DNA of 64,000 bases, taken from positions 278,113 to 342,112 of the forward strand of contig NW_003314335.1 in the NCBI RefSeq assembly GCF_000143415.4, read 5' to 3'. Source of the DNA: Selaginella moellendorffii. Taxonomy: Eukaryota; Plantae; Lycopodiophyta. The notes beneath the pieces were generated by a model, which was not told the DNA's origin, ran no database searches, and saw nothing but the letters and a program-made list of their open reading frames with translations. Positions 15,051 to 48,300 of the stretch are shown here, in pieces. Every line of letters starts with the position of its first letter. The first letter of the stretch is position 1. Position numbers and translations under genes: made by a program.

Positions 15051-16588
15051 TTAATAGTACGCCGACTCGTCCAAGCGGGGATGGCCAGAGAGATTGATTT
15101 TGGAGGCAAGCTTGATTGAGAGAAGTCCCTTTGCAGTCTCCAAGCTATTTCCATCCTGTCGCTTCCATTCAAACGAGTGGAGAAGAGTTGCCACAACCAA
15201 AGGGATAGATCTCATTGCCAATGGGTAACCGACACAGATCCTCCTCCCAGCCGAGAACGGTATAAAATGGAAGTGATTACCGGCGACATCGTAATCTGAG
15301 TTGATAAAACGCTCGGGCAGAAACTCCTCAGCACGATCCCAGCAAGCCGGATCTCGTCCGATGGCCCACATGTTGACGAGAACTTTGCAGTTGGCTGGCA
15401 CTGTGTATCCAGCGATACTGACAGGCTTTGGGTTGGCGTGAGGAATCCCAAGAGGACCCGGTGGATGCATCCTCAGTGTTTCCTTGACAATTCCTTGCAC
15501 GTACGGCAGCTTTACCAGATCTTCTTCACGTACAAGCCTCTTTCTCCCGACAACAGCGTCAAGTTCCTGCTGGGCCCTTTGTATGATATGCGGATGATTC
15601 AGCGACTCGGCGATGGAGAATTCAGCCACGTTTTGGGAGCTTTCTAATCCAGCAGTGATCATATCCTGTCATCACCATGGAAAATAATATGAAATAAATA
15701 AATGAATAAAACGTCAAGACGAAACATTACCATTAACAACGCCATCACAGAAGCCTCTGATACGCCATCATCATCTTTGAGGGTCAACAAGACATCCAGA
15801 ATGTCCCGAGCCTCCTGTCCTTCCTTTCGTGTGCCGTTGCGCTGTTCTATTATCTCACCAAGGACTTTCTTGATGTCTGGCAGGATCTCCTTCTTCATGA
15901 TTTTATAAATTCCATGGAGGTCGAGCCAGTCCATAAGAGGGAACAGCTCACCAATATTTATTAGTAACGATAAGCTGGCCGTTTTCTCCACTAGACCCAC
16001 AACTGTTTTAGCAGCCTCCAGCTTTTGTCCGAACAGCATGAGGCAGATGACGTTCGTATTGTATTCTGCCACCAAGTCTCTCAGCTCGACCGAATTACCG
16101 CTGTCAAAGGATGTTTTGATAGAGCGAATGATTGAGAGCAGCTCCGTCTCGCGTTGTCTTGCTGAAATGTTGAGCTTGGAGGATGTAAACATATGTGTAG
16201 TAGAGACTTTTCGTAGCTTCTTCCAGGAGTCGCCATAAGGTGCAAAGAGGAGATCTTTGTACCCCAAACTGAACAAGCGGAAACTCCTTGTGTCTGGCCT
16301 GTAGGCAAACTCAACATCGTGGGTCTGGAGCACTTCCTTGGCCATGGCGGAGTTGTTGGCCACTAAAAGGTCGCACATACCGACTTTTAAATAGATGAGG
16401 GGACCATACTTCTTGCTAAGATGTATGAAATGCTCATGCAGAGGTTGCTTCAGAGAGAAAATGCTACCAAAGAGAGGGATAGACAATGGTCCGGGTGGAA
16501 GCCTGCCTTGAGGCTTACGGAAGCTCATAAGCCATGTGCAACTCAAGGCGAGAATGCAAGAAGCTATCACAAGATCCAAAAGCTCCAT
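15051..16588 (-). CDS. Cytochrome P450, CYP71 clan (A-type), 2 exons, 490 aa, intact (CYP-A)
   Basis: N-terminal membrane anchor plus PPGP, single phase-0 intron 15666-15730, I-helix AGLESS, ETLR, PERF and heme motif FSAGRRICVG. Confidence 0.93.
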
Positions 16589-16719
16589 CTTGATCAGTGG
16601 CAGGGTGCGGGCATGGATCTTGCATTGTATTTAAACCATGAGCCAACGTGATGCGAATGGTTGTTGCTGAGCCCATTGTTTTGGGGCCCGATGAATACTA
16701 TGAGACTGCCTGACCAGCT

Positions 16720-17780
16720 CATGAAACCTCTCTACAACCTTCAGTCAGGAAATTTCCTGCGTTCAAACGCAGGGTTTACTGACTTTAAAAGCAACAACCA
16801 CTCGCATCAAGTCTGCTTTGTAACTTAGACCATGGTGGCATGCTTGTGTGGAATGACTGCCCACACTTTTGGCTAGAGATTGAGACATTCAGAAGTTTGT
16901 TTCGAAGTTTTTGTGAATCTTTTTAGGGTCCAGATGGTGAAATGAAGTAACAATAGGTCAACCAGTCAATTGTACTTTGTTGGGTGTAGACTTGAATCGG
17001 CTCCTTTGTTTTCTAGCTACTTTCTTAACAGCATCGTCTTTAGAACAGGGGCCCAATGAATACATTAGAGCAAAAGTGTGGCTTGGATTTGGAGACTGGG
17101 GCCACAGGTATTAACCAGTCCAGGTCAACAACAGTCTTCTCTCTACACCTTTCAGTCAGGAAGCACATCAAGTCTGCTTTGTAACTTAGACCATGGGGCA
17201 TGCTTAGGTGGAATTATGACCGCCGATACTTTCGGTATTCAGTCCTAGAGATTGAGACATTCAGAAGTTTCTGTGAATCTTTTCGGGGTCCAGATGGTGA
17301 AATGAAGTGAGTCAAGATAAAGTGACTTTGTGAAGTGCGTCTGCACTCTTAGTTCTTCTCATTAGTGGAGGAAGCCCGTCTTTACTTTATTGGGTGTAGA
17401 CTTGAATCAGCTCCTTTGTTTTCTGATCAAGAATCTTAGCTACTTTCTTAACAGCACCCTCTTTAGAACTGGCAATTGTTTTGCAATGAATACTTTGTTG
17501 CACATTACATTACAGCAAGATTGTGGCTTGGATTGGAGACTGGGAGAGTTTTTCCCACATTCGGACTATGAATATGCCACAGGTATTAACCAGTCCAGGT
17601 CAACAATAGTCTTCTCTCTGTCAGGAAAGTCTACTGACTTTATAAGCAACCGCTTTGAGACCATGTTGACATGCTTATGTGGAATTATGACCTCTGACAC
17701 TGTCAGTATTCAGTTCTAGAGGTTGAGACATTCAGAAGTTTCTGTAAATCTTTTCAGGGTCCAGATAGTGAAATGACGTA
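16720..17780. repeat. Three degenerate tandem units (~360-470 bp spacing) containing copied fragments of the TPS last exon
   Basis: TCAGAAGTT..GGGTCCAGATRGTGAAATGA recurs at ~16890, ~17260 and ~17730. Segments 16973-17045 and 17368-17468 are near-copies of TPS coding sequence 18089-18190. Confidence 0.85.
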
Positions 17781-17918
17781 AGAAACAATAGAGAAGAAAT
17801 ATTTTAAATAAAAATAAATATCAATAGAATTTACAGAAAAAATTTTAAACGATTATAGGGAAGCCACGTCATTGAATATTCTAATATGTTTACAAGAATA
17901 CATTTTTCAATTTCTATA

Positions 17919-20900
17919 TTAATTTATGTGGGAAGGCTCAACATCACCTTTGGTACCTATGATATTCCTTATAACGGTCTGCATGTCATCGCCGGGAAGC
18001 TTGAGTTCATCTCGTGATTCCTTGATACCATTTGCATAGACCAAGCGGGCTGTACGTGCAGTCTCAAATATAATTCTTCTCACTAGCTGAGGAAGCCCGT
18101 CTTTACTTTGCTGGGTGTAGACTTGAATCAGCTCCTTTGTTTTCTGATCAAGAATCTCAGTTACTTTTTTAACAGCATCCTCTTTAGAAGTTTCTGGACA
18201 ATAATTGAGGTAAGCTGTGATGCTAGAGATGCTCAGGCCATTTTCCATCTCAACCTGCATATATAAAGCTGTAACATGGTAGATCGAGTTGGCACCAGGG
18301 CTTACCTTATATGTTGCAAGATCATTTGATAATCTTATAATATCACAAGTCAGCTCCATTTCTTTGCAATTTGAAGCTCTTTCCAGCGTTTCCAGGTCCA
18401 TGTCTATTCCGCAGAATGGCAAAGAACAGATTATTACGGCTGGAATTCCAGTTCTTGGCCTTGACTTTTTCAGGTACTCTTCAAGTGTAGGCATGCTAGT
18501 ATTGCCCCTCTGCGTGACTTCACCAACCACAGACTTGGCATACACTGCAAACTATAACCAATGGACCAAATGTCAAGCAAAATATAGTACATGAGCTGTA
18601 TGTACCTGGCGTGAGATTATTCCGCTCGTGGAAACACATGCTTTCGATGCTTCTTGCATGAGCTCATTCAGTGTGGTGTATACAGCATGATAAAATGACT
18701 TAGCGTCATCAGTCAGCTTTGTCGCTGAGGGATCATCCCATCTTCAGAAACAGTCATGCGTTAATCAATAATCCATCAAGACCTACCGTACCTCTCTATT
18801 GATGCAACTAGCTCTTGATATTCTCTGGCATCCAGAAAATGATCGGCAAGGTCGTCACAAGCAACAACAAGACATGCTGCTTTAGTGTACGCAAGCCTCA
18901 TAGCAGAAAGCTCGGGTTCAAAAATATAAGCAGCGATTTGAAAGTGAAGCCTGTTCACCAGGTGGTCTGTCAACTTCACCCGCTTGCTTGTGAATGAAAT
19001 TCCAGTGCTGGACCACCATCTGTTTATGAAAATGCAAGTGTCGAAATATTAGAGAGAAAAAAAGAAGCAAGCATACCTGGATAGTTCAGCAGTTTCATCT
19101 TGCAGAACTGATCTGCAAAAGTCGTAATCTTGTTTCGCCATTTCCAGAAAAGCGGCATTGTTGACATTAGGTAGCCTGCACTTATACATTATTGTGATAT
19201 GCATGTGTGTGTAGAGGGGAGTGCACCTGTAAATGGTTTTTGCTATCCATGAGTCATCTGTCCCGTACTTCGATATGTAGGACTTCGCATACAGCCTTGG
19301 AGGGCATGAACAAAAGGCATTGTTCAGCTCGAAAGTCACCTGTAAATGCATGAATATTGATTAATAGAAATATATGTTATACCTCGCCAGAAAGGTCATT
19401 TTTAAAAGCCCATTTGTCCAAACCGTGGTCATGGAGGTGTGAAAGATACTGCTGTGAATAAGCATGGGCTTGATCTAGTATAGCCTCTTTTGGATATGCT
19501 ACTTGAGAAGCTCTGAACAATGAGAAGACGTCAGATATTCCATGACTCCGTTCCCCAGAGAAGCAAAAGAACTTCCCATCTTTCATGAAGTTTGTGAAGA
19601 CGTCTGTAACACATATGCACTTGTTAGAGTCAAACTAGCTGTAATAGCCAAATCATACCAGCCGACACGTCATAGCCGTTCAATCTGAGAAGTCTAAATC
19701 CCATACCTGAGCAATCTAGCTCAGGTACAGAGACGTTTCTTGCCCAGCCAATGCCCTTTTTATCGTCCCAGTACCTGAATCATAATATATAAAAATAAAT
19801 GCCAAAATATGCCTTTAGCTACCTGTAAACATAGTCAAGTATCTCCTTAATCTCTTGTTTGAAGAAACGATCGATGCCTAGGCGTTGAAGGGTGTCAACC
19901 ACCCACAGACGTTCAAACATGTCCAATGGATAAAAATCGGGCACTGTATAAAGGTAAATGTATATATGTGCATGCATGAGATAATTAATTACCTGCATTC
20001 TTGTGCAGTTTGACCAAGTTCCGCAAGTACGTGAGGCATTTTTCATCTTTGGTGTGGAGGTACACGCATGCTGTAGAAGAGGGTGACGTTAAAAAGGATC
20101 CGTCTTCTGACTGCAATGTCAAGATCTGCGTCCAGTCAATACATTCTTGCAGCCCTTCCAGGGAAAAAAGCACTGTGGTTGGAGCAGAGTGTATGGTATC
20201 GAGCGAGATTCTAAAACAGGTCTTGTGAACCCTGTGGAAAAATATAAAAACACAGTTCTTACCCTTTAAGTTTAGCTTCCCGTAGTTCTTCTAGAAGTTG
20301 TATGAATAGATGGTTACTTGGAATGCGTAAGCCTTGGGATTTTGCTTCCTCAACCATCGGAGGAAAGATAAGTTCGAAACCTACAAGCAAGTCCCCCTTG
20401 TCTTCCTTCAGCACATTAATGTTTCTGGATGAACTCCAATCCTACAGAAGTATAGTGTTAATACAGTACTAGCCAAGATATTGCTTTTACCAGTAGCAAT
20501 GACGTCGTCATGTATGTTCCATGTCTTGAGTGCAAGAATACAAGACAGAGTACACAAAATCCGGTCATAGATGTTGAAGACTTCGTCTCCCCATGATCCA
20601 TCCTGGCGCTGGTTTTCCACAATCCAGTCGAGGCACTGAGGGAACTCCGGTTGCTGGCTGTTGAGTGGAGATGGAACCCGAGCAACCCATGCAGTGTCAT
20701 AAGGTGACATGGAGATGTTACCATCGGACACCAACCGCAGCATTTGCCTAACCTCATTTATCAAATCCGGCAACTTCTTACAGGAAGGAGACTCTCGAGT
20801 ATCATATGCCTGCATCAATGTAGAAAAGTGAAAAGTGTAATTTAAAACATCACCACTGCTTACAGTTTGCAGAGTTGCTTTTGGAACATGGAGTACACGA

Positions 20901-21037
20901 GACGCACTAAACCGCTGGCATGACCGCTGGGGTGCAATATAGCGAAATGTTAGCCTCTCACTCCGATTGGGCTGGAAAGAAAGCATCGAGAGTTTCCAGC
21001 AGCTGCTCATGATGGACAGATTGCCGGTGCACGCCAT
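17919..21037 (-). CDS. Plastid-targeted tri-domain (gamma-beta-alpha) class I terpene synthase, KS-like; 13 exons, one apparent frameshift in exon 3
   Basis: Ser/Arg-rich transit peptide, [40 protein letters not shown]. The class II DxDD position reads ELDC (inactive). Class I motifs DDLAD and NDLATYKVE are intact. All introns are short GT-AG, but exon 3 reads GLEFIQKH* (TAA 20416-20418) while the conserved frame continues [21 protein letters not shown]. Confidence 0.88.
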
Positions 21038-21589
21038 TAGTTTAGGACTGTAGCAAGCTTTTTGTTTCACAATTTATATACCTCCAGAGCAACTACCGTT
21101 CATGACTGAAGCGCCGTGATTGTCTTAAATGCTTGAAAACCTTTGAAGTTCGGGAGAAATTTACAAAGGCCAGTCCTCCTCTGTGGACTCTTTGATTGGT
21201 AACAACTATTCCGTCAAAACATCAAAACTTCAAAAGTTCAAAGTTCAAAGCTTCAAAACTTAAGTCAAACACGGCGCTTCAGTCCACAGTTCGGGAGAAG
21301 TTTTGCTGACTATTAAGATTTTATCCTTTATACCCTAAATCAACTAATTAAAAAGGTGATCACTTGACTATAAGGTTTTTTCCGTATCTTGACCTGATGA
21401 CAAAGGCTAGTCCTCCTCTGTGGAGTCTTTGGAGATTGACCTGATGCCTAACAATGACAAAGGCTAGTCCTCCTCTGTGGACTCTTTGGAGATTGACGGA
21501 TTGGTAACAGCTATTCCTTTGCGAAGAAATGGTTGCGGCAGCAGATAAATTTAACTAGGGCACTGAGGAAGGAGTGGCTCGCATTCCAA
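21038..21589. promoter_or_regulatory. Divergent promoter shared by the TPS and CYP-B
   Basis: ATGs are 553 bp apart. TATATAAA on the - strand at 21073-21080. Three 30-bp direct repeats (21164, 21401, 21458) and a 15-bp perfect inverted repeat (21104-21118 / 21270-21284). Confidence 0.7.
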
Positions 21590-23205
21590 ATGGAGACGAT
21601 TGTGAATGGTGCAGCTGCGGCATCAGCTATGGGAGCGTTTGGACTGCTGTTGTACTTGAGGAACAAGATGAAGAAGATCCAAGGAAACAAGCAGCAGCTT
21701 CCTCCTTCCCCACAGTCACTCCCAATCATTGGTCATCTGCACCACTTTGTTTCCTCCGGGAAAGAGCCTCACCAACTATTCCAGAGCCTTGCAGCCGTCC
21801 ACGGGCCAATCTTCTCCCTCCGCCTCGGATACATGAATGTCGTTGTTGTCTCGGACAGATCTACTGCTAAACAGGTTCTTAAGACTAATGACTTGGCTCT
21901 TGCTTCCAGGCCCAAGCTCATCTCCGTAAAGCATGCCTTGTACAACTTCCAAGATGTCGTCTTCAGTGATTACACCAAAGAGCTGCGAGAGATCAGGAAA
22001 TTTCTAGCTATGGAGCTCCTGTCGGCCAAAAAACTGGATATGTTCACAAATGTCAAGGAGGACGAGCTCTCATGGCTGGTTTTGACTCTAGCCAATGCGT
22101 CAGAGCAACTCAACACTTTCAAGATGAGGGATTACCTTGTTGGACTGACATACAACGTCATCACAAGAATGCTTATGGGCAAACGGTACTACGGAGCCCC
22201 GCCGGATGACAAGGAGTATGAAGAGGGAGTTGCATTCAAGAAAGTCGTTGACGATGCTATCAAAATTGGAGTAGCTGGAAGCATTGCCGACTTCTTCCCG
22301 CAGCTCGAGTTCCTTGACTGGAAGGTCTCACAGGCTAAAAAAGTTCAGCGAGAACTGGACAAGTTCCTGCAACGTATGCTGGATGAACACCGTGTGCCGA
22401 ACCGAGGAAACTCTCAGGAGGATTTCCTTGACATGATTCTGGAGGCTTCGTTCATGAGCGATGACAGGATCAAGGCGACTGTGTTTGTAAGTTAAAAAGA
22501 TGCTCACATATTTTATAGGAATCAATGACACTGTTACATTTGCAGGATCTCATCACAGGTGGAACCGACAGCTCATCCTCGTTCCTTGAGTGGACCTTGG
22601 CGGAGCTTATCATGCATCCTCAAGTCCTTGCCAAAGCACAAGAGGAAATAGATACCGTGGTTGGTCACGGACGCAAAGTAAAAGAGTCGGACATTCCCAG
22701 GATGCCTTACTTACAGGCAGTGATCAAGGAAGGCTTCAGGCTGCACTCACCAGTCCCACTCCTGGTGCCTCATTACGCTAACCAAGAGTGCAGCATCAAC
22801 GGTTACACAATCCCATGCAACACAACCGTCTTTGTCAACACATACGCAATGGGAAGAGACCCCAAGGTGTGGGATAATCCACTCGAGTTTGACCCGGAGA
22901 GGTTCCTTTCAGGTCCACATAAGGAGGTTGAGGTGTTGGGTCAGAACGTCAACTTCGAGCTGCTTCCATTTGGTTCTGGACGCAGGTCATGCCCAGGCTC
23001 TGCACTTGGCAACTCTATAGTGCACTTCACTTTGGCTACACTGCTCCACTGCTATGACTGGAAAGCTGGGGATAAAATAGATTTTGCTGAGTCTAGCGGA
23101 GCTGCTAAGATCATGAAGTTTCCGTTGTGTGTTCAGCCAACTCCAAGGCTCCAGATACAGGACATGTATGTTACCAACCAGTATACCAACCCAATCCATA
23201 TGTGA
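21590..23205 (+). CDS. Cytochrome P450, CYP71 clan (A-type), 2 exons, 518 aa, intact (CYP-B)
   Basis: LPPSPQSLPIIGHLH, phase-0 intron 22487-22545, I-helix GGTDSS, EGFR, PERF and heme motif FGSGRRSCPG. Confidence 0.93.
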
Positions 23206-28247: not shown

Positions 28248-28511
28248 TGTCAGGAATCCCTCAATTCTTGCCACATTCTTGACTCTCACCAGATTCTTGA
28301 CCTGCAGACCACATTTTTGACTCTCAAGACACTTCCCTATTCCTGACTCTCTGATTTCCTGTACGATTCTTGAGTCTCGAGCCAGATTCCTGATGATGAT
28401 GTGGCGCCTCCTCGACCTCAGCTATATTTAGGCCGTTCTCGATCTAAGAGTGGTGGAGCTTCATCAACCTATAGTATATATAGATTAGCTTTGTTCCATT
28501 TCTCCACAATC
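28248..28511 (+). mobile_element. Diverged, 3'-truncated LTR of the chromovirus family
   Basis: Starts TGTCAGGAATCCC and aligns to 29292-29580 with many transitions. Confidence 0.85.
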
Positions 28512-29291
28512 AGGATCAACCCCATCGCTGATTCGAACTAAGTCACCAACACCCTCCGCTTCCATCACTTGAACCCAAAAGGTCCGACATCCCCTCTTAG
28601 CTGCTTTTTGAGCGGCCCTCGCAATCAGGAACTTTGCATCCCAATCCTTTGAGGAACGCTTTTGCAACTGAAAGGATACATTAGGACGTCCTTCTGACTT
28701 CAACTTGATACGACTTTGTCCAGCACCATAAATCCCTTTTATATACTTGTTGAAGAAATCCATACCAAACACCATCTGAAAATCTAGTATCTTCAACACT
28801 ACCAAGTCTACTCTTTCTTTCCACTTGGATATTTTTATTGGAACATCACTCACAAACTTTCTAGCTACTTGCCCACCTTCTGCAAACTGGAAGTGCATAG
28901 GTGACATTTGCTCGCATTCAATCCTAACAACTTAACTAAGTCTTCGGATATCACGTTGTGCGTAGCTTTCGTGTCAATCATCACTCGGATTCGGTGTCCA
29001 CAGACAAAGCCTACCAAATACATCAACGAATCAGTGTTTGCATTGACTGCAAGAAAAGCTTGAGGAAAGCAACAAAAGTTACTCACCTCTTTTTCCTCAT
29101 AGTCTGCATTGACCAACTCGTCAACCCCTTCAGCTTCACCACCACCGTCTTCCCTCATGACATTAACACGAGACCTTGTCTTATGCTTGTTGGGACATTC
29201 TAAGGACCTATGTCCCGACTCTCCACAATGGAAACAATGACCCACACTACCCATTCCGCTAGGAGCAGGTTTTGCAGGTTGCTGCTGCTTG
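28512..29291 (-). mobile_element. Fragment of a second Ty3/gypsy element (gag Zn knuckle + aspartic protease)
   Basis: CFHCGESGHRSLEC (CCHC), VMIDTKATHN (degenerate DTGA), MVFGMDFF; frameshifted. Confidence 0.8.
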
Positions 29292-29776
29292 TGTCAGGAA
29301 TCCCCCAATTCTTGCCACATTCCTGACTCTCGCCGGATTCCTGACCTGCAGACCACATTCCTGACTCTCGAGACACTTCCCTATTCCTGACTCTCGAGAC
29401 ACTTCCCTATTCCTGACTCTCGAGACACTTCCCGATTCCTGAGTCTCGAGTCACATTCCTGATGATGATGTGGCGCCTCCTCGACCTCAGCTGTATTTAG
29501 GCCGTCCTCGATCCAAGAGTGGTGGAGCTTCATCAACCTATAGTATATATAGGTTAGCCTTGTTCCATTTCTCCACAATCTGAATCAACACCAGTCTAAG
29601 GCCTCTTCTTTGTTTTCACTAGCTTTTTCTCTTTGTCTTTAGCATTTTCCAGTCTTGATCTTGTTGGGGGTCTTGACAGTTTGATTCAGATTGTGTTTTT
29701 TTGCTTTTCTTTTAGCTTGTTTTGATTATTTGATTGCCTTTGTCTTTTCCCCCCTTTCTTTTCTTTCTTCTTGCCA

Positions 29777-30748
29777 ATGGAGTCTCCAAGCCATTCTGAT
29801 TTCTTTGCTGAAGTCCTTGCAAAAATCCAGTCTGAGAATACCGAGCTGAAGGCAACCCTTCTTCGCATGCAGCAGGAGCTTGCTTCACTTTCGGCTCAAG
29901 GATCCAGCAAAGTTCCTGAACCGAAGGTGAGTTTCCCGGCGAAATTTTCAGGCAAGCGTTCGGAGCCTCGTGGATTTTTGAATCAAATGGAGCTGATCTT
30001 TGCACTTCATCATCGGCGGTACCCCACTCCCGAGTCTCAAATCGGCGCGATTGGGACATTGCTCGAGGGTGCAGCTTTGTCATGGTTTTCTCCTCTTCTG
30101 GAGAAGAGCATGAAAGGGGTCGTGGTTCCGGAGCTGATGGATCTTCAATTGTTCAAAGAGAAGCTCGAAGCATGTTTTGGCGAGACGGATCGGGTTCGGG
30201 CTGCTACCACAAAGATGAGACGTCTCTCTCAGGGGTCTCGTCCTGCCTCGATCTACGCTGCAGAGTTCCAACTCCTTGCCTTGGACACTCAGTGGGATGA
30301 GCGGGCCCTGATTGACCAATTTCGTTTCGGCCTCAACAACGGTGTCAAGGATTTGTTGCTCACCATGGAGGATCCCAAGGACCTGTCGGACACCATCAAC
30401 AAAGCTGTTCGATGTGACAATCGTCTCTTTGAACGTCGTCAGGAAAGTCGCCGCGCCGCTATTTTTCCGTCCCAGACTCAGGAATCCCAGCTTGAGTCTT
30501 CGGGGCATAGTCCTGAACCTACTGCTCCGGTCCCGATGGATATTTCTGGTACTCCCCGACTCATTAGAGGGAAGTTGAGTCCTGCTGAGAGGCAACGTCA
30601 AATATCTCATAATCTTTGCCTCTACTGTGCTGATCCTAATCACAAAGCAGCTGTGTGTCCCAGGAAGCCTCCCCGATTGCTCGAGTTCACTCTGCCTCAA
30701 AGTCCACCACTGTTGCAGTCGGGAAACGACCCTATCCAAACAGAGTAG
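29777..30748 (+). CDS. Gag (intact, PEG10/sushi-like) with CCHC knuckle
   Basis: [34 protein letters not shown] and [14 protein letters not shown]. Confidence 0.9.
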
Positions 30749-33700
30749 GAGCTGTCTGTTTGGACTCCCCAAATAAAAATCACTTTTCTTCCTTATCAAG
30801 CTCCTCACCACCTTTCATCAAAGCCACCACCAATTCCCGCAACTTCCGCGTCCCATGTCTCCTTTCTTTCACCGGACAATCAGGACTCAAGGCTTTGGCG
30901 CTACTGGACTCGGGTGCAACTTCCTGCTTCATGGACACGGACTTTGCTGCCCGACATCACGTTCCTCTTTCTCCTACTATACGGGATCTGAGGGTTGAAG
31001 GCATCGGCGGGCATTTTGTGTCTCCATCTTCTGGACTTAGGGAAACGTTGCCCGTTCAAGTACACATCGGGTCCACCGTCACCGATATCGCCTTCAACAT
31101 CATCAACAGCAAGTCTTCCTCTGTGGTGCTCGGTCTTCCTTGGTTCCAACTACATCAGCCTCAGATTTGTTGGAAGGACTTACAGCTCATCTCTCCCACA
31201 TCACCATCTCCCACGGCTTCCCCTGGTGTTCATCGAGTCCGAATCAGGAAAAGTTCCCTAAACTCAAGTCGGGGTTCTGTTCCTGACTCTACGCAGTTTT
31301 CATCCTCTTCTTTTTCCTCTCTTCCATCTTACACTGGACAGTATCCTCGTCTCATCATTCCATTTAGTCGTACCCCTCCTCCTATCTCCACAATCACTAT
31401 GAAAGAACTCCTTCATGAAGAACCTCTTTTTCTTTTTGCTTTGCATGTTTCTCCTGTCAGTCTTCCTGAGAAGTATCATGATTTTGGGGATGTGTTTGAC
31501 AAGAAAAAAGCTAGTGTACTGCCTGTTCATCGGCCTTATGATTGTCCCATTGATTTACAGGAAGGAGCATCACCTCCGTGGGGGCCTATCTACGGGTTAT
31601 CCCCGTCCAAGCTTAAGGCCCTCAAAGAGTACGTGGATGAGAACCTTGCCTCGGGCTACATTCAGCATTCGCAGTCCCCGGCTGGAGCGCCTGTCTTCTT
31701 TGTCAAGAAGAAGGATGGGAGCTTGCGGCTAGTCATCGACTACCGAGGTTTGAACAAGGTGACTGTTCAGAACCGTTATCCGCTGCCCCTGATCTCGGAC
31801 CTGTTGGAACGCCTCGGCGGTGCCCGCTTCTTCACCAAGATCGACCTCCGTGGAGCATACAACCTGATCTGGATCCGGCCTGGTGATGAATGGAAGACTG
31901 CATTCCGAACCCGCTATGGCCACTTCGAGTACACTGTCATGCCATTTGGCTTGACAAATGCTCCAGCGGTTTTCCAACACATGGCGAACGACGTTTTTCG
32001 GGAGTTTCTTGATCAAATGGTGATCGTCTACCTCGATGACATCCTCATCTACTCAAAAACTTAGGAGGAGCATGACGAACATGTTCGCAAGGTGCTAGCG
32101 AAGCTGCGAGAACACAGCCTATACGCGAAGCTTGAGAAATGTTCCTTTGATCAGCAGTCTGTGGAGTTCCTTGGGTTCATTGTCACTCCTGAGGGTATCA
32201 CGATGGATCCTGCTAAAGTCAAGACTATTCTCGAATGGGAGCCTCCACAATCAATGTCAGACGTTCAGGTTTCCTTGGCTTTGCCAACTTCTACCGCAAA
32301 TTCATTGATCACTACTCTGACATTGTCCTTCCTCTCACACATCTCACTCGCAAGGATGTTCCCTTCTCTTGGTCTGCTGCTGCCCAGCAGGCCTTCGACA
32401 CACTCAAGGCGGCCTTCAGTTCTGCTCCTGTCTTGATCCATGCTGATTCCTCACAACCTTTCTTCATCGAGGCTGACGCCTCCGACTTTGCCATTGGTGC
32501 TGTGCTATCTTAACTCGGAGCGGATCACGAACTTCATCCGGTCGCTTTCCATTCTCGGAAATTCCAGCCTGCGGAGATCAATTACGAAATCCACGACAAG
32601 GAGCTTCTTGCCATCGTGGATTCCTTTGGAGAGTGGCGCCGTTTCTTGGAGGGGGCGAGCCATCAAACAACAGTCTGGACGGATCACAAAAATCTCGAGT
32701 ACTTTGCCACTTCCCGAGTTTTAAGCCGTCGTCAAGCAAGGTGGGCACAATTCCTGAGTCGGTTTGACTTTGTTATCAAGTACAGACCTGGAAAGTTTCA
32801 AGGCCTTCCTGATGCTCTTTCAAGGCGCTCCTATCTCAGTCTCAGGCTTGGTAATCCTGCCTTCGATCAACAGGATCAAGTTATCCTCGGTCCTGATCGG
32901 CTTCAAGTTATGGCAATTTCCCTGGCCCCTCAGGACTCCTCCTTGATGGATGCAATCAGAAACGATCTTCAATCCGATGATCTTGCTAGCGACATTTTTC
33001 CCCATCTTTAGGCTGGACACCCAGTGACTCTCGACTGCCGGCGATTTGACGAGTTCGAGTTCTTAGATGGCTTATTGTACCGTGGGGAACAGCTTTACGT
33101 TCCTGAAGGTGATGCTCGAAGGTTGATCCTGATGGCGTGCCACGATAGCCCGACTGCTGGTCACTTCGGCATTGCGAAAACCTATGAGCTAGTTGCATGG
33201 GACTTTTGGTGGCCTCACATGGACGACTACATCAAAGCTTTTGTTACCTCCTGTGACACTTGTGCCCGGAATAAGGTACCTCGCCACCTTCCTTCAGGTT
33301 TGCTTCGTTCCCTTCCGGTCCCTTCAGGTCCTTGGGAATCCATCTCCATGGATTTCTTGAGTGATCTTCCGAGTTCTGGAGGCTTCAACAGCATTTTAGT
33401 CGTGGTGGATCGCTTCACAAAGATGGCGCACTTCTTGCCATGTACCAAGGAGTTTTCGGGCGAGGACATGGCAAAACTGGTATTCAGGGAAATTTTCCGA
33501 CTTCATGGGATTCCTACAGATGTGGTTTCGGATCGGGGGCCTCAGTTCATCTCTCATTTCTGGCAACGGTTTTTGCAGCTGCTTGGAGTGAAGGCCAACC
33601 TCTCTTCGGCATATCATCCTCAAACTGATGGGCAGTCCGAGCGAACGATTCAGACGTTGGAACAATTCTTGAGGTGCTTCATCAACTATCATCAGGATAA

Positions 33701-34493
33701 CTGGTTCGATATCCTTCCCCTTGCTGAGTTCTCCTATAACAACTCTGTTCACTCCTCTCTTCGAGTTTCCCCCTTCTTTGCGAACTCTGGCCGAAATCCC
33801 CAATTCAATCTCTCACTTCCTTCTCCATCTGAATCCTCTCGTTCAAATCCCCGCTCTGAATCATTTATCTCCAACCTTCAGGAAATCCACAACTCCATCT
33901 CCTTCCACCTCCATCGTGCTCAGGAATCTCATAAAACATTTGCCAATGTCCATCGTCAGAATTGTCCCCCTTACAATATCGGGGATAAAGTCTGGCTCCT
34001 CAGGCGAAATATCTCCACCACTAGGCCCTGTCCAAAACTCGATTTCAAACGCCTTGGTCCTTTCCCTATCACTGCCATCATTAATCCTGTCACCTATCGC
34101 CTTGCACTTCCCTCCTCATATCAAATTCACCCCATTTTTCACTCCTCTCTCCTTGAGCCTTATATTCCCAGTCCTATTCCAAATCGGGTCATTCCTCCAC
34201 TTCCACCAGTGTAGCTCGAGGATGGGTCTGAGTACGAGGTTCAGGACATCCTTGATTCCAAGATTTCACGATCTAAACTCTACTATCTGGTGGACTGGAA
34301 GGGTTACGGACCTGAGGAACGCACTTGGGAACCTGCGGACAACCTGATTCATTCTCCTGACCTTGTTCAGGACTTCCACCGCTGCTATCCTTCTCGTCCC
34401 AGTCCTCATTCTTTTTCTCCATCTCCCATCCCTCACCGCTCATCTCATCCTCCTCTTCGTTCTCGTTCACATCCTCGTTCCACTCGTTCTTGA
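30721..34493 (+). pseudogene. Pol in the -1 frame (PR-RT-RNase H-IN-chromodomain), disrupted
   Basis: LLDSGA, YLDD, ADASD, GH..HHCC, SMDF...SDRG, GPF, EYEVQDILD..YLVDWKGY..TWEP. Stops at 32062, 32511, 33009 and 34212; frameshift ~32270. Confidence 0.9.
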
Positions 34494-35904
34494 GGAGGGG
34501 GTGCTGTCAGGAATCCCCCAATTCTTGCCACATTCCTGACTCTCGCCGGATTCCTGACCTGCAGACCACATTCCTGACTCTCGAGACACTTCCCTATTCC
34601 TGACTCTCGAGACACTTCCCGATTCCTGAGTCTCGAGTCACATTCCTGATGATGATGTGGCGCCTCCTCGACCTCAGCTGTATTTAGGCCGTCCTCGATC
34701 CAAGAGTGGTGGAGCTTCATCAACCTATAGTATATATAGGTTAGCCTTGTTCCATTTCTCCACAATCTGAATCAACACCAGTCTAAGGCCTCTTCTTTGT
34801 TTTCACTAGCTTTTTCTCTTTGTCTTTAGCATTTTCCAGTCTTGATCTTGTTGGGGGTCTTGACAATTTCCACACTAAATTTATCAATTCTTCCATTGTG
34901 TAAACTAGTTATTCCATGTGAAACAACAAGTCATTTATCTGTACCATACTTTCGTCCATGGATGCTCTACCAAGGGGAAGAACATATGCATGAATGCCCA
35001 ATATGTATAATTTCAAATTTAGGAGTAGGAATATACCTTGCTCAAGGGTACATTATATTTTTAAGTAGCCACTAATTAATGGAAATCGAACTTGTGCCAT
35101 TTGCTCTGATACCACATATAACACACTTTATATCTCTCCCCTTAAGCCAACTAAAAAAGAGACAATTGTTTAATAAGAGAGCCTTTAATAGCTATTTTAT
35201 CCCCATTTATCCCCCAAGGTTTCAAAGATCCATGATGACAGTATATCTAAATCTCATCCCATGATCACATGCGCTATAGTAGTGGATCTATGTTTAAACT
35301 ACTAAAGTTTACGAAAATTACAAGCACACTAATTCAAAGTATCAATATGGAAATTCTTGTGAATCTATCTAGATTTCCTAAAGACTATAATAAAAATTTG
35401 GTTTTTAAACTTCCACCTTCTAAAAATGCCATAGAAGGGATGCACCAGGATCAAGATGAGTATGTTTGGGTGAAATTTATGGCTTGTTTCATAGAGTGTT
35501 ATATATTCAATCTAAATGAGATGAGGTACTTACAAAGATTTAGTTACTAGAGAATAAAGAGGACTAGTGCTTATGAGAAATCAAGAGGTTAGATGCTTCC
35601 AAATCAAAGAATAAAAGATTTATAAGATTGAGTGAGTTATATATCAATTTGGAGTAGGATTTACAATTAAGTGTCTTGCTTGGATTGGAGGAATATTATG
35701 TGGTAAGTAGATAACTATAGGAACTCTATACACTCTAGCACTTTGTTTGTAGGGACAATGACAATATGGTGATCCTCCACAGCATTGTGATCAATTCATG
35801 TGGTTCTATTCAATAGAAGTTTTACATATATAGTCTATTGTAGTTATAGATTATTTAAAAACCAAAACATATACCACATACTTGGCCAATTGAAGAAGGG
35901 GTAG

Positions 35905-43084: not shown

Positions 43085-44720
43085 GAACTTGATGAATTTG
43101 GAGTTTCAATCTTTAGTTGAAATAAGTTTTAAATTTGAAGAGAACACAATACAGCCACAACCACAAGCTTAACCTCAATATTATTCTTAAGAAGTTTCAA
43201 AAATAAAAAATAACAAACATGTAAAGATTACAAATATTTGGTCAAAGGAAATAAAGGCAATATACTCAAAAGCATTATAGTTAAAGGTGAAAGTTAAAAG
43301 TGTCAACATTAAGCAGCAATATCATCATCACAAGTATATAATTCTCAATTATGGAATTAATAATATAAAAAAAAAGGTTTATAACATCACAATCAACTAC
43401 AATTATGCATACTTCTTTTAACATCAGACTTTTGGTAAGCCTTTCATCCCTTGCATATGTATTTTGTATATTGTATGCTCTTTGGGTGGATCTAAATGTT
43501 AAACTTTTGATTCATCACCCTGCAATGTTTGAATATGAGGTATTTATAATATTGCAAAAAAATTAGATAGTGATATTTTATTCAAACTTAATATAAGATA
43601 AATAATTTTTTACTTATAAATTACATCTAAAAAACCATATAGATTTTCTTATAATAAGATTTTATATAATGATAAAATTTAATATAAATATACATTATAA
43701 ATTAGAGAATTCTTACTTAAATAATTAGTATAACTATTAAATATTAAATATTAAAATAATAATTCTTTCATAAATATGTTGATAAAGAAAAACCTCTATT
43801 AGTAACTATTGCTACTAAGATTACATACTTGTAGTTTATAGATATCTAAATATTATTAAAATTATTCATTAAGTATAAAATACCTATTTAATGTAAATGT
43901 TGACACTAAACTCATAACAGATTAATTTTTAGTGTGCCAAAATATTATAAAGATATTCTTGTTAACCACTGGCTCCCTATTGACATTGGTAAATCTTAAT
44001 AAAAGTTTTGCATATATGGTCTATTGCAATATAAATACCATTTATTTAATTAGTTAGAAATTTAATTAGTTTATTTAATAAACCCTATATATATTTCTAA
44101 CTATTTAATTAGTTAAAAAAGAGGTAAACCTGAAGAATTTAGAGTTTTGTTAAATATGTTTTCAATTTGAAGAGAACACTTTACAACTATAACCACAAGT
44201 TCAAAATCAACACTTTTTTTAAGAAGTTCCAAAAATAAAAAATAACAAATATGTAAAGCTTATAAATACTTGGCCAAAGGAAGTAAAAATAACATATTCA
44301 AAGGCATCATAGTTGAAAGTGGAAGTTAAAAGTGTTAATATCAAATAACAATATTACCATCACAAAGTATATAATTCTTAATTATGAAACAAATATTTTA
44401 AATAGAAAGGTTTACAACATCACAATTATCCAATTCCCAAGTTGTACTTGTGCATACTTCCTTCAACGTTAAATTTTTTGGTAACTTCTTAATCCTTTAC
44501 AAACATATGTATTTTATATATTGTATACTTCTTGGGTTGGATCCAAATGTTAATTTTTGGATTTATCACTCTGCAATGTTTGAATATAAGATGTTCATGA
44601 CATTGAGAAAGAATTCTATATTAATATTGTATTTGAATTTAATATAATATAAAAACATTTATTTATATATTATACCTAAAATAACATAGAGAATTTATTT
44701 TAATAAGCTTTTAAGTATAA
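43085..44720. repeat. Diverged tandem duplication of an AT-rich ~600-bp segment
   Basis: 43085-43660 aligns to 44130-44720 (AATTTGAAGAGAACAC..., TGCAATGTTTGAATAT...). 43670-43980 also recurs at 55730-56010. Confidence 0.75.
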
Positions 44721-46927
44721 TCACTAAAAGAATCTGATAGCCAGTCAACCAAATAATATAGTTTAGAACTATAATTTATTTAAATCTATTTGGAAAAAAG
44801 AGATGATGTTGGCAAGAGTAATTATAACACAATGATGAGTATCTTAGGCACAAGAAAGGTGATAATGAACTTTTTTATGAAAAAAAATCTAAAGTAGCAT
44901 AAGAAGTAACAAGAAATCACTTTGCAAGATTAGGTGTTTTAGGAAATAAATATGATCAATGAGAATGAATGCTATAGTTCACAAAAAATAAAGAGTGATA
45001 TATCAAAAAGTGTTGAAAAATGTTATAAGAAAACTTAACAAAAGGAAGAAAACCATCTTAATTATTTTATTTAATTAATAAAGTTTTTGTTTAATATTTT
45101 GATAAAATTTTAATATATTTATATATATATGGGGCCACCAAGGACCTCAATCTTAACATGTGATATGATTCCTTTAACTAACTAATAGAGTTAAGCGCGA
45201 AACTTCTCTAATACCAAATATAAACTCCTGAATTTAAACTTTCCAAGATGTCACCCAACCTAATATTACTCAAACCCAAGGACCCCTAAGTATCCCAAAA
45301 TTGTTAACCGATTGGGAAAGAAGATGCATTTTTATTCATGGATCCTTTCCTTTTATTTTTGAAATCATTCTTTTTGGTTGTTTATAGAATATTAAAATAG
45401 TGCCAAACTTTATATAGCTCCATTTATTTTATATATTAAGAGGAGTGAAGGAATAAATGCATAAAGTAATATTAGATTAGTCCTAGTGATTTCAACATTC
45501 CAATGCCAAGATTAATATTCATTGACTTTTGCATTATAAAATTTACCTTATGGATGTGTTAATGAGGATATTATGGGTTGTACCATAAGTTCCTTAGTGT
45601 GCTTTTGAACTTTTGCTTCTTGGTTTTAAACTCAAAAGTTTATCTCCATCTCTTTGCTTAATGGCTCAAGGCTTTAAAACTCAAGCCCTACTTCATTGCC
45701 TTTATCAGTGTTATGTTCTGCTCTATGGTTATTACTATAAGATAAAGGATGAAAACCATGTATATTATATTAAGTCACCAGTATACTAAAATCTTTATGA
45801 CTATTCCAATGTTATTCCTTACTTTTATTCATTTTCTCTTTAATTGTATACTTAGAAATTACTTTATACACTTATTATTTTGCTCCTTAGTTATATATTC
45901 AAGAGTTTATCTTTGTCCCTTCGATCAATAGCTTAAAGCTCTAAAACACAAGCCCCATTCTATTACCCTTGACACACATGTCCAAAAGTTAGATTTTACT
46001 CTATGGTTATCCTAACCATTTAAATAGTAAAACATCTAATGTTAGATAGTAATTTACTATAGTTAAAATGATTATAAAAATATTTATTAGTTTATGGCAC
46101 ACATCCTCAATTGATCTCAAGCTATAGTGCATTTAGTTTTCACCTTTCATAATAGTTAAATAAGGAGAAAAAATGATCCACAATCACAATAAGCTAATCT
46201 AAAGGATTTGCCTCTATAAATATAACTCACCCTGTTTCACATGCACTACACTCACACCCCTATTCCTTATAAAACAACTAGTTATCCACCTATATTGTAA
46301 TCCAATACAATAAATACCTATTTTAATTTTATTAGTTAACATTAAATATATACCATTTGCTTTGATACCACATATAGTACACTTTATCTGTCTTCCTTTA
46401 AGCCAATTGGAAAAGGGGCAATTGCTTAATAAGAGAGCATTTAATACCTATTTTATTCCTATACATCCCCCAAGTTTTTAAGAATTCACAATGTTAGTAT
46501 ATCTAAAGTTCATCCTCTAATCAACAAAGAAATACATATTCAGATAGATGAGGATAATAGCAAGAATGAATATAAATGTTAACAAATTGAATACAGCTTT
46601 AATAATAGAAAAGCATAGCATCTTTTATGATAATTTATATAAGGGAGAGTGATTTTCAAAATGTCCTAAATAAAGTGATAGTAGAAATTTCTAAAGCCAA
46701 GTTAATAATAAACATTACAAAGAGGTTAAGTGTTACTATTTAAGAATGATGAAAACTTTGGTAAGATTTATAATGATGCTATGTGAAGAAATAAAAACTT
46801 TATTGAGATTTAATTAAAAAATCATTTCTAATATCATAGAAAGGTTATGTTGTAGAAGGTGTTTGAGAACAAAGTGAATATCATAATTGTGTTTTTTTTG
46901 TCTTAACAAAATGTTATTAAAGTAGAT

Positions 46928-47851
46928 TGTCGCAAATGTGACTATGGATATTGAAAGTTATTTATCGATTAATACTTTTGGATATTTTTTCCTACGGAAA
47001 GAAGTCAATATTGTGTTGTGGGGTTAATTTGGCATTTTGAGTGTACTTAGACTGGACAAACATAAAGACATAATTTCTACATGCTATTAGCTAAACATAT
47101 TTAACCTAGTAAGGAGTTCCTATCTTATTTTGTCTTGCATTAGCTAGTGACAAAAACCTTTATGTATTGAGATTAGTTCCTCAATATCACAAAATAATAA
47201 TTTACTATATTTGCTAAACACCCTTACTATCATTCCTCATATGTTGGTCCAATTTGGTCCCAATGCCTATTTATAGAAAGCTTTTAGATTTTCTAGTTAG
47301 AATTATAAATAGAATGTAGAGATTGTCTTGAACATGATGATATTGTTCTTGCATCCAAATTCGCAATCTAACACCATTTTATATTTAGTAAGTTTTCATG
47401 ATTGCTTTAAAGACTAACTCTTGAGACTAGGGTGAAAGCCTTAGCTTGGGTATAAGCTCAAGCTCCATACCATATTAGCTGGTGGAGTATTTATATATTT
47501 ACATTAAAGCATTGATATACTAAACTAATATTAGACTTTGTTTAGCATTGTTTTGCATACTAGTCTTGGCATTGAGATATTCAATGCTTTAGGATTGTTT
47601 TTATGTTGCTTTGTGCTCCTGTCTCTTTGCTTGTTAGGTTGAATGCTCATAAGTCATCCCATGCTCTGGTTCTTTTGCTCTTTGATTATATATTCAGGAA
47701 TTTGGCTTTATCCCTTCATTTAGTGACCTAAAGTTTTAAAACTTGTCCAATTTATTGCCCTTAGACATGTGGCTAAGGGTTTAAGTTCTGCTCTATAGTT
47801 ATTATATGGTAAATCATCATAGGATAAAGGGTGAAAACCATATATGCTACA
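46928..47851 (+). mobile_element. Old solo LTR of the LARD family
   Basis: TGTCGCAAATGTGAC...ATGCTACA aligns to 35905-37056 with pervasive C>T/G>A changes; flanks TAGAT/TAGAA are a 4/5 TSD match. Confidence 0.85.
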
Positions 47852-47870
47852 TAGAAAAAAAATTTAAAAA

Positions 47871-48300
47871 TCACAAAAAAGCATAATTTTTCCTGTGTTT
47901 GAAAATAATTAAAGCATTGGTCATATCAAAAGGCCTCACTATATACTTATAACAAATATCGAACACTATAGCCACCCTCCCAATACAAATTAAATTTAAG
48001 TCAATTTTGGTGAAGAATTGACTTTTTAAGAGATACTCTAACATCTCATGAATTAGCAAATATAGGTATTAATTTGGGGTAGTGGATAATCAACCACTTG
48101 ATAAAGAAAGGATTTTCTTTAGATGAAAAAGAAAGCTACATTAGCAAGAGTAAGAGATTGAGAATGTTAAATAAACTATTTGAAAGGCTTTTTAAAATGT
48201 TTATGAAAAGCCTCAAAATCCACCAATAAAAGATTATAGATTAGAATAAATGGTAGTGATTTCCCCTCCAAAAAATTGATTAAAGCTGATAACATTGGCA
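47871..48300 (-). mobile_element. Ancient chromovirus RT relic
   Basis: FFTKIDL...YKYIVRPFDMTNALIIFKH parallels FFTKIDL...[19 protein letters not shown] of the young element. Confidence 0.7.

What the first reader, a model, noticed from the sequence alone, without database searches (positions are those of the whole stretch)
15051..23205. Compact CYP-TPS-CYP candidate diterpenoid biosynthetic gene cluster
Seen: within 8.2 kb and with no intervening genes lie a plastid-targeted tri-domain terpene synthase and two intact, mutually dissimilar CYP71-clan P450s. CYP-B is head-to-head with the TPS (553 bp), and CYP-A starts 1.3 kb after the TPS stop. Established: TPS/CYP pairs are the core of plant terpenoid clusters (e.g. 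momilactone, casbene-derived), and CYP71-clan enzymes commonly oxidise terpene scaffolds. Inference: this is a scaffold-plus-two-oxidations pathway for a specialised terpenoid in a non-seed plant, where such clusters are little described. No class II (CPS) gene is in the window, so the TPS would need GGPP directly or CPP supplied in trans.
Basis: partly seen in the sequence, partly recalled or inferred. Interest (0 to 1): 0.88.

Follow-up and report, generated by a model that had tools for sequence, protein, structure and literature searches.

The report
Spikemoss terpene synthase flanked by P450s
In the spikemoss Selaginella moellendorffii, a terpene-making enzyme gene sits between two oxidase (P450) genes and all three are transcribed together, so this is a plausible but untested small pathway cluster; the terpene gene copy in the reference genome is broken by a 2-base deletion.

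Summary
The window is Selaginella moellendorffii scaffold GL377639.1. Within 8.2 kb, with nothing between, lie three genes:
- CYP-A, a 490-aa P450 whose public model is truncated.
- A 13-exon gamma-beta-alpha terpene synthase, SELMODRAFT_124329.
- CYP-B, which is CYP794A1 (518 aa).

The two P450s are 32% identical and both belong to the CYP71 clan.

New here:
- **Broken reference allele.** The reference TPS allele has a 2-bp (AT) deletion in exon 3, giving a stop at codon 173. A spliced RNA contig from one run carries it; another run carries an intact 835-aa allele.
- **Transcription.** All three genes are transcribed, and the TPS correctly spliced, in the same three RNA assemblies. The spacers between them are silent.
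- **TPS class.** It is a long-branched TPS-h member, 46% identical to SmCPSKSL1. Its class II motif is degenerate (ELDC) and its class I motifs are intact.
- **Paralogous neighbourhood.** SmCPSKSL1 itself lies beside a BAHD acyltransferase, a taxadiene-hydroxylase-like P450, and a P450 that is the closest relative found for CYP-B (41%).

The cluster reading is partly supported. No product, substrate or true co-expression is shown. It is a new member of a known kind.

Earlier scan notes report microbial-type TPS/P450 neighbourhoods elsewhere in this genome, not this one.

The parts
15051..16588 (-). CYP-A: two-exon CYP71-clan P450, 490 aa (exons 16588-15731 and 15665-15051; 65-nt GT-AG intron at the conserved A-type position). 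It has a PPGP hinge, I-helix AGLESS, ETLR, PERF and heme motif FSAGRRICVG. The public GenBank model is truncated to 307 aa.
   Evidence: (PF00067, E 1e-31 and 7e-56). One search shows the 307-aa model. RNA contigs reach 16581-16585 in X1 and X2 and 16530 in X13.
16589..17918 (.). TPS-to-CYP-A spacer, with no RNA coverage from 16600 to 17799. It is built of degenerate 360-470-bp tandem units that carry two fragments of the TPS last exon: 17350-17468 (92% to 18071-18189) and 16973-17045 (79%).
17919..21037 (-). Terpene synthase SELMODRAFT_124329 (TPS-h), 13 exons: 21037-20864, 20809-20491, 20441-20263, 20210-19993, 19943-19823, 19774-19659, 19603-19383, 19339-19227, 19175-19077, 19019-18792, 18741-18606, 18551-18306 and 18254-17919. 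Motifs are [14 protein letters not shown], and ELDC in place of DxDD. The N-terminal 58 aa are Ser/Thr- and Arg/Lys-rich with a single acidic residue, which is transit-peptide-like.
20429..20432 (-). Site of the 2-bp deletion in the reference allele. The reference plus strand reads AT|GAAC; the X13 transcript reads ATAT|GAAC. The reference reading frame gives GLEFIQKH-stop at codon 173. The ATAT allele reads [18 protein letters not shown] and stays open for 835 aa.
   Evidence: (tables 5 and 5c). The JGI model P0029 dodges the lesion with an odd splice.
21038..21589 (.). Shared divergent promoter region between the TPS and CYP-B. RNA contigs end at 21087 (TPS) and begin at 21581-21617 (CYP-B). 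It holds three copies of a 44-bp element at 21160-21203, 21397-21440 and 21454-21497.
   Evidence: 3 matches, 0 expected from shuffles, and none elsewhere in the window.
21590..23205 (+). CYP-B = CYP794A1 (SELMODRAFT_124314, UniProt D8ST36, RefSeq XP_024516123.1), 518 aa. Exons are 21590-22486 and 22546-23205, with a 59-nt intron. Motifs are GGTDSS, EGFR, PERF and FGSGRRSCPG.
   Evidence: Of the three genes, the RNA contigs covering it have the highest depth.

Best explanation
This is a three-gene neighbourhood in Selaginella moellendorffii that most likely encodes, or until recently encoded, a short specialised terpenoid pathway, probably diterpenoid.

**Proposed mechanism**
- A plastid-directed TPS-h enzyme has lost class II cyclase capacity and keeps a class I active site.
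- It would ionise a prenyl diphosphate. That substrate is either GGPP directly or a copalyl-type diphosphate made in trans by one of the species' class II or bifunctional diTPSs.
- Two ER-anchored CYP71-clan P450s would then oxidise the product. These are CYP794A1, which shares a roughly 0.5-kb divergent promoter with the TPS, and the downstream CYP-A.
- The TPS/CYP794-like pairing may be old. SmCPSKSL1, the most similar TPS found (46%), also lies head-to-head with a P450 array whose CYP71-clan member is the closest relative found for CYP794A1.

**State of the reference allele**
In the reference haplotype the TPS is a recent null allele. It carries one AT-dinucleotide deletion and the rest of the 2.5-kb coding sequence is otherwise open. 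An intact allele is expressed in another S. moellendorffii sample, so the locus may be polymorphic for the pathway.

**Shown versus inferred**
- Shown: gene structures, transcription and splicing, the two alleles, family placement, and the paralogous neighbourhood.
- Inferred: plastid targeting, loss of class II activity, the substrate, that the P450s act on the TPS product, and block duplication.
For: **Identity and layout**
- The gene content and spacings are confirmed.
- The organism and scaffold are identified: EFJ12417.1, and L001 is 100% identical to window 7919-30815.

**Expression**
- Spliced contigs of all three genes occur in runs X1, X2 and X13.
- Depths for CYP-A / TPS / CYP-B are 177/50/440 in X1, 186/183/512 in X13 and 11/2-4/49 in X2.
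- Coverage is zero over 16600-17799 and 21200-21399.
- Some RNA runs of the same species hold none of the 862 sampled words.
- The TPS transcript is about 3-fold lower relative to CYP-B in the two runs carrying the frameshift allele, as nonsense-mediated decay would give. This is anecdotal.

**Alleles**
- An intact allele exists (tables 5 and 5c).
- With those two bases present the ORF is open for 835 aa, so there is a single lesion.

**TPS family features**
- DDLAD and NDLATYKVE are present, and ELDC stands where most aligned relatives, including every functional class II cyclase, have DxDD.
- It falls in the Selaginella TPS-h clade with SH-aLRT 100.
- Monofunctional class I TPS-h enzymes are documented (PMC9169658).

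**P450s**
- Both are CYP71-clan orphans with at most 37% identity to any non-Selaginella hit.

**Paralogous neighbourhood, locus L004**
- It holds a CYP85-clan P450, a CYP71-clan P450 of 508 aa, a BAHD acyltransferase and SmCPSKSL1.
- The 508-aa P450 is 41% identical to CYP-B and groups with it at SH-aLRT 94.

**Background**
- Two other SmTPS loci, L002 and L003, have no P450 within 10 kb.
Against: - No enzymatic or metabolite evidence exists.
- Expression evidence is three assembled RNA data sets without normalisation, tissues or treatments. That shows presence, not correlation.
- The reference TPS allele is a null, and the TPS has the longest branch in its clade (0.99 against 0.51 for SmCPSKSL1). 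Relaxed constraint could explain that as well as neofunctionalisation.
- The C-terminal half of its alpha domain finds only 7 relatives at E<=1e-3 among 1.84 billion representatives.
- Both TPS SNPs between the two alleles are non-synonymous.
- The CYP-B/CYP508 grouping comes from a tree with no other Selaginella P450s. It may only reflect shared species origin.
- The middle Asp of DxDD, the catalytic acid, is retained in ELDC, so loss of class II activity is likely but not proven.
- No second-haplotype copy or orthologous locus in another species could be examined.
Confidence: 0.5

Rival explanations
1. The adjacency carries no shared pathway. The TPS is a decaying, fast-evolving duplicate on its way to becoming a pseudogene. 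The two P450s act on unrelated substrates and lie next to it through local rearrangement.
For: - The reference allele carries a frameshift that its transcripts also carry.
- The TPS has a long terminal branch and a very divergent alpha-domain C-terminal half.
- Both TPS SNPs between alleles are non-synonymous.
- The TPS-CYP-A spacer is made of duplicated TPS 3' fragments, which shows local rearrangement.
- In all three runs the TPS contigs have the lowest or equal-lowest depth.
- Other SmTPS genes have no P450 neighbours.
Against: - The 2.5-kb CDS has only one lesion, and an intact expressed allele exists.
- All catalytic class I motifs are kept.
- All 12 introns are correctly spliced.
- Two P450s flanking one TPS with no intervening gene is improbable by chance (rough estimate 0.002-0.01).
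- The nearest TPS paralogue shows an analogous TPS/P450 arrangement, with the most similar P450 found.
Confidence: 0.35
2. It is a functional cluster but not a diterpenoid one. With its class II site lost, the TPS uses FPP or GPP (or GGPP in a non-labdane cyclisation). The P450s then decorate a sesqui- or monoterpene, or a macrocyclic or linear diterpene.
For: - DxDD is degenerate, and no class II partner lies in the window.
- Loss of class II activity repeatedly preceded shifts in substrate use during TPS evolution (PMC9169658).
- The active-site half of the alpha domain is highly divergent.
Against: - The N-terminal extension looks like a plastid transit peptide, which favours GGPP or GPP pools.
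- All characterised members of the clade in the tree act on C20 substrates.
- According to the literature (PMC7826640), mono- and sesquiterpenes in S. moellendorffii are made by the microbial-type MTPSLs.
Confidence: 0.15

Closest known systems
SmCPSKSL1, the labda-7,13E-dien-15-ol synthase of S. moellendorffii (UniProt G1DGI7), and its genomic neighbourhood on scaffold GL377628.1
   Same: - It is the most similar protein found (46% identity over 96% of the query).
- It sits in the same Selaginella TPS-h clade and has the same gamma-beta-alpha build.
- It too lies head-to-head with a P450-containing gene array, whose CYP71-clan member is the most similar P450 found for CYP794A1 (41%).
   Different: - SmCPSKSL1 is bifunctional, with DIDD present. 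The window's TPS has ELDC.
- Its neighbourhood also holds a BAHD acyltransferase and a CYP85-clan (taxadiene-5-alpha-hydroxylase-like) P450. It has no CYP-A relative.
- SmCPSKSL1 is represented on two scaffolds, the two haplotypes. The window's TPS and CYP-B are each found on one scaffold only.
Plant diterpenoid biosynthetic gene clusters, from my own knowledge and not tested here: the rice momilactone and phytocassane clusters, the Euphorbiaceae casbene clusters, and the momilactone cluster of the moss Calohypnum plumiforme
   Same: A diterpene synthase lies directly beside P450s of different families, is co-transcribed with them, and belongs to a lineage-specific enzyme family.
   Different: - Those clusters have demonstrated products and co-regulation, and usually more genes (class II plus class I diTPS, a dehydrogenase).
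- Here there are only three genes, no class II partner and no chemistry, and the reference allele of the scaffold enzyme is broken.
Monofunctional class I enzymes of the TPS-h subfamily: the lycophyte 16-alpha-hydroxykaurane synthase and the fern syn-manool synthase, as described in PMC9169658
   Same: [quoted passage not shown]
   Different: - The window's TPS is not one of them. No characterised protein is more than 46% identical.
- Its loss of class II activity is inferred from the motif alone.

Membership tests
Plant terpene synthase family, TPS-h subfamily | Gamma-beta-alpha tri-domain architecture with plant TPS N- and C-terminal domains | tested here: met
   - PF01397, PF03936 and PF19086 are found on the exon pieces and on P0029.
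- The 835-aa model aligns with tri-domain diTPSs over 96-99% of its length.
Plant terpene synthase family, TPS-h subfamily | Phylogenetic placement with lycophyte non-hormone TPSs | tested here: met
   - It falls in a clade of 7 Selaginella TPS-h proteins, including SmCPSKSL1 and SmMDS, with SH-aLRT 100.
- That clade sits within an h/d clade of 23 rows with SH-aLRT 99.
- The order within the 7-row clade is unresolved.
Plant terpene synthase family, TPS-h subfamily | Class I metal-binding motifs DDxxD and NSE/DTE | tested here: met
   DDLAD and NDLATYKVE are aligned with the motifs of characterised enzymes.
Bifunctional class II/I diterpene synthase (typical TPS-h) | Class II DxDD motif | tested here: not met
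   - ELDC stands where SmCPSKSL1, SmMDS and all other functional class II enzymes in the alignment have DxDD.
- The middle Asp is kept, so activity is unlikely but not excluded.
Plant 'typical' TPS gene architecture | 12-14 introns at conserved positions | tested here: met
   There are 12 GT-AG introns of 43-57 nt, all confirmed by spliced RNA contigs. The 12-14 range is given in PMC6779861.
Cytochrome P450, CYP71 clan (A-type) | P450 fold with heme-binding FxxGxRxCxG, PERF, ExxR and I-helix (A/G)Gx(D/E)T(T/S) | tested here: met
   - PF00067 is found on all four exon pieces.
- CYP-A has FSAGRRICVG, PERF, ETLR and AGLESS, with Ser in place of the conserved Thr.
- CYP-B has FGSGRRSCPG, PERF, EGFR and GGTDSS.
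Cytochrome P450, CYP71 clan (A-type) | Closest relatives are CYP71-clan families | tested here: met
   - Best hits are named CYP81, CYP82, CYP93, CYP75 or CYP71 at 31-37% identity.
- UniProt names CYP-B as CYP794A1.
- The family name of CYP-A was not determined.
Plant biosynthetic gene cluster | At least three adjacent genes of at least two enzyme classes for specialised metabolism | tested here: met
   One TPS and two P450s of different families lie in 8.2 kb with no intervening gene.
Plant biosynthetic gene cluster | Co-expression of the member genes | tested here: inconclusive
   - All three genes are present in the three RNA assemblies examined, and some other runs hold none of the words.
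- Contig depths are not a measure of expression.
- The one raw-read run tried, X18, laid no reads.
Plant biosynthetic gene cluster | Members act in one pathway | not testable with these tools
   This needs heterologous expression and metabolite analysis.

The most novel reading that the evidence does not exclude
An ancestral, divergently transcribed TPS-h/CYP794-like gene pair was duplicated as a block early in Selaginella. It then grew into two different diterpenoid gene clusters. One is the SmCPSKSL1 cluster, which gained a BAHD acyltransferase and a CYP85-clan oxidase. The other is this cluster, which gained CYP-A and lost class II activity. That would be the first family of related typical-TPS biosynthetic clusters in a lycophyte. 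The present cluster would also segregate as a presence/absence (null-allele) chemotype within the species.
Probability: 0.25. Interest if true: 0.7.

Novelty: new member of a known kind. Interest (0 to 1): 0.5.

Why it matters
Terpenoid gene clusters are well documented in flowering plants. They are scarcely known in early-diverging vascular plants, and how such clusters arise is an open question.

This locus, together with the SmCPSKSL1 neighbourhood found on the way, gives two small, related and experimentally tractable TPS/P450 neighbourhoods in the model lycophyte. One is anchored by an enzyme of known product. The pair allows a direct test of whether clusters grow from duplicated TPS-P450 pairs.

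The naturally occurring null and intact TPS alleles offer a ready-made genetic contrast for finding the metabolite.

Practically, two public gene models need correction. The TPS model is mis-spliced around the frameshift and lacks its first exon. The CYP-A model is truncated.

Tried and rejected
- **Assembly error for the frameshift: rejected.** An independent de novo RNA contig (X1) carries the same sequence, while X13 carries two more bases.
- **Alternative splicing that rescues the frame: rejected.** No GT-AG combination restores homology. The JGI model's splice (..ILAST|EDKGD..) is not used by any RNA contig.
- **The TPS as an already characterised SmTPS (SmMDS, SmCPSKSL1, SmKS, the 16-alpha-hydroxykaurane synthase): rejected.** No protein above 46% identity other than its own model was found.
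- **The P450s as orthologues of conserved enzymes such as F3'H: rejected.** RefSeq's automatic name for CYP-B is 'flavonoid 3'-monooxygenase', but identity to such proteins is only about 33%.
- **Second-haplotype copy: not found.** The protein clusters of the TPS and CYP-B each hold sequences from one scaffold only. No tool here searches plant genomes by DNA.
- **Synteny in Diphasiastrum complanatum and further S. moellendorffii TPS loci: no data.** The gene look-ups returned 'not on record'.
- **Literature.**
  - Li et al. 2012 and Boutanaev et al. 2015 are not held.
  - Searches for 124329, CYP794, SmCPSKSL1 and lycophyte BGC found no description of this locus.
  - The expression-atlas preprint has nothing on it.
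- **Raw RNA reads of run X18:** laid nothing, which is no test.
- **CYP-A's official CYP name:** not looked up, because its spliced protein has no reference and I did not type long sequences.

Full report
**What is there**

ORF listing and Pfam scans show P450 pieces at 15051-16588 (minus strand) and 21533-23205 (plus strand). Terpene-synthase pieces lie between them on the minus strand.

A library-wide phmmer search with the last TPS exon region found one 99%-identical protein, P0029. This is GenBank EFJ12417.1, SELMODRAFT_124329, of Selaginella moellendorffii. The contig encoding it, GL377639.1 of GCA_000143415.2, is 100% identical to window 7919-30815. The window is therefore the 2011 reference assembly.

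The annotated neighbours run in this order: an RsmB-type methyltransferase, ribosomal protein S4, P450 (518 aa), TPS (775 aa), P450 (307 aa), HAUS3, Tubby and PP2C. The rest of the window holds a WD40 gene, a Ty3/gypsy retrotransposon, PPR, PARP, SET and DUF1442 genes. There is no class II diterpene cyclase, no prenyltransferase and no further tailoring enzyme.

**Gene models**

Spliced contigs from three public runs gave 12 GT-AG introns of 43-57 nt for the TPS. These runs were guessed to be RNA. Their intron-skipping joints and the empty intergenic bins show that they are.
- The TPS has 13 exons, from the ATG at 21037 to the stop codon ending at 17919.
- CYP-A is 16588-15731 plus 15665-15051, 490 aa. 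The GenBank model of 307 aa is truncated.
- CYP-B is 21590-22486 plus 22546-23205, 518 aa. It is identical to RefSeq XP_024516123.1, and UniProt names it CYP794A1.
- Each P450 has its single intron at the position typical of A-type P450s. Both carry complete heme, PERF, ExxR and I-helix motifs.
- The two P450s are 32% identical.

**The TPS is broken in the reference but intact elsewhere**

With the RNA-confirmed splice sites, the reference mRNA is 2,506 nt, which is not a multiple of three. It reads ...[12 protein letters not shown]-stop at codon 173.
- The contig of run X1 is identical to the reference across this exon. The lesion is therefore real and not an assembly error.
- The contig of run X13 has 12 letters between 20430 and 20490 where the spliced reference has 10. 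This amounts to ATAT instead of AT on the plus strand at 20429-20432 (tables 5 and 5c).
- With those two bases the frame reads [18 protein letters not shown], parallel to ERFLKQNIYKLTKDKGD of SmCPSKSL1. It stays open to give 835 aa.
- X13 also differs at five single bases across the three genes:
  - TPS Gly>Arg, which restores the conserved KLKR.
  - TPS Ala>Gly.
  - CYP-A His56Gln plus one silent change.
  - CYP-B, one silent change.

The reference therefore carries a recent null allele with a single lesion, and an intact allele is expressed in another sample of the species.

The JGI model P0029 hides the lesion with a splice that no RNA contig uses, and it lacks exon 1. P0029's 90% cluster has no RefSeq member, and no other protein above 46% identity was found. 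This is consistent with RefSeq treating the locus as a pseudogene, although I could not verify that.

**What kind of TPS**

The nearest proteins are:
- SmCPSKSL1, the labda-7,13E-dien-15-ol synthase, at 46% identity.
- SmMDS at 41%.
- Diphasiastrum and Phylloglossum TPS-h proteins at 41%.

In a maximum-likelihood tree of 46 proteins, the TPS sits in a Selaginella TPS-h clade with SH-aLRT 100. Its branch is long, 0.99 against 0.51 for SmCPSKSL1.

DDLAD and NDLATYKVE are present. The class II motif reads ELDC, where the other Selaginella TPS-h proteins have DIDD or, in two of them, DIED.

Loss of class II activity within TPS-h, giving enzymes that take a copalyl diphosphate from another enzyme, is documented in PMC9169658.

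The first 58 residues are Ser/Thr- and Arg/Lys-rich with a single acidic residue. This is compatible with a plastid transit peptide, but no predictor was run.

**Expression**

All three genes appear as long spliced contigs in X1 and X13. In X2 the two P450s are full contigs and the TPS is fragmentary. The table gives contig depths.

| Run | CYP-A | TPS | CYP-B |
|---|---|---|---|
| X1 | 177 | 50 | 440 |
| X13 | 186 | 183 | 512 |
| X2 | 11 | 2-4 | 49 |

- Bins 16600-17799 and 21200-21399 have zero depth.
- Several other RNA-sized runs of the same species hold none of the sampled words.
- This shows joint presence and joint absence. It is not quantitative co-expression.
- The TPS/CYP-B depth ratio is about 0.1 in the two frameshift-allele runs and 0.36 in the intact-allele run. 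Nonsense-mediated decay would give that pattern, but the sample is tiny.

**Promoter and spacer**

RNA contig ends leave at most about 490 bp of untranscribed DNA between the TPS and CYP-B. It contains three copies of a 44-bp element found nowhere else in the window.

The TPS-CYP-A spacer consists of degenerate tandem units that include two fragments of the TPS last exon. This is evidence of local duplication.

**Context from paralogues**

Two other SmTPS loci have no P450 within 10 kb: SmMDS (L003) and SELMODRAFT_418910 (L002).

The locus of SmCPSKSL1, on GL377628.1 (L004), does have them. Upstream of the TPS and on the opposite strand lie three genes:
- A BAHD acyltransferase of 480 aa, with HMVMD and DFGW motifs.
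- A 508-aa CYP71-clan P450.
- A 471-aa P450 whose best solved relative is taxadiene 5-alpha-hydroxylase (E 1e-56).

The 508-aa P450 is 41% identical to CYP-B. That is more than any other protein found, where the maximum was 37%. The two group together with SH-aLRT 94. That tree contains no other Selaginella P450, so sisterhood is not established.

The shared head-to-head TPS/CYP794-like arrangement suggests an old pair that was duplicated as a block. This is an inference.

**Literature**

No paper in the held library describes this locus, CYP794A1, or clustering around SmCPSKSL1. The two most relevant papers, Li et al. 2012 and Boutanaev et al. 2015, are not held, so prior mention cannot be excluded.

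Earlier notes of this scan report microbial-type TPS/P450 neighbourhoods elsewhere in the same genome. They do not report this one.

**Verdict**

The biosynthetic-cluster reading is reasonable and somewhat strengthened by transcription, the paralogous neighbourhood and the orphan P450 families. It remains unproven, and in the reference haplotype the scaffold enzyme is a null allele.

It is a new, uncharacterised member of a known kind, the plant TPS-P450 cluster, in a lineage where few are known.

Noticed in passing
L004:3846-13130 (S. moellendorffii scaffold GL377628.1, 94734-117863): The characterised diterpene synthase SmCPSKSL1 lies directly beside a BAHD acyltransferase, a CYP71-clan P450 (508 aa, 41% identical to CYP794A1) and a CYP85-clan P450 (best PDB match taxadiene 5-alpha-hydroxylase). 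This is a four-gene candidate cluster for oxidised or acylated labdadienol derivatives. I found no mention of it in the held literature.
   Followed up: partly
window:21160-21497: Three copies of a 44-bp element (core AAAGAGTCCACAGAGGAGGACTAGCCTTTGT) lie in the divergent TPS/CYP-B promoter and nowhere else in the window. They could be a shared cis-element or a small repeat insertion.
   Followed up: partly
window:16589-17918: The spacer between the TPS and CYP-A is made of degenerate 360-470-bp tandem units. They carry two decayed fragments of the TPS last exon: 17350-17468 (92%) and 16973-17045 (79%).
   Followed up: yes
window:17919-21037 and 15051-16588: Two public gene models are wrong. 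EFJ12417.1 (775 aa) lacks exon 1 and bridges the frameshift with a splice that no RNA contig uses. The CYP-A GenBank model is cut to 307 aa, although a 490-aa ORF with a normal membrane anchor is transcribed.
   Followed up: yes
window:28248-34869: A Ty3/gypsy LTR retrotransposon (gag, protease, RT, integrase ORFs at 29771-34214) has LTR-like direct repeats near 28248-28524, 29292-29593 and 34504-34869.
   Followed up: no
window:1-4000 and 44000-52000: Long AT-rich blocks (26-29% G+C) have no ORF of 130 aa or more and contrast with 43-55% G+C in the genic parts.
   Followed up: no
run X3: A run labelled as a different organism ('organism B', 2018) holds 37% of the sampled 31-mers of the 8.2-kb stretch. 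It is either a mislabelled S. moellendorffii sample or a very close relative carrying the same three genes.
   Followed up: no
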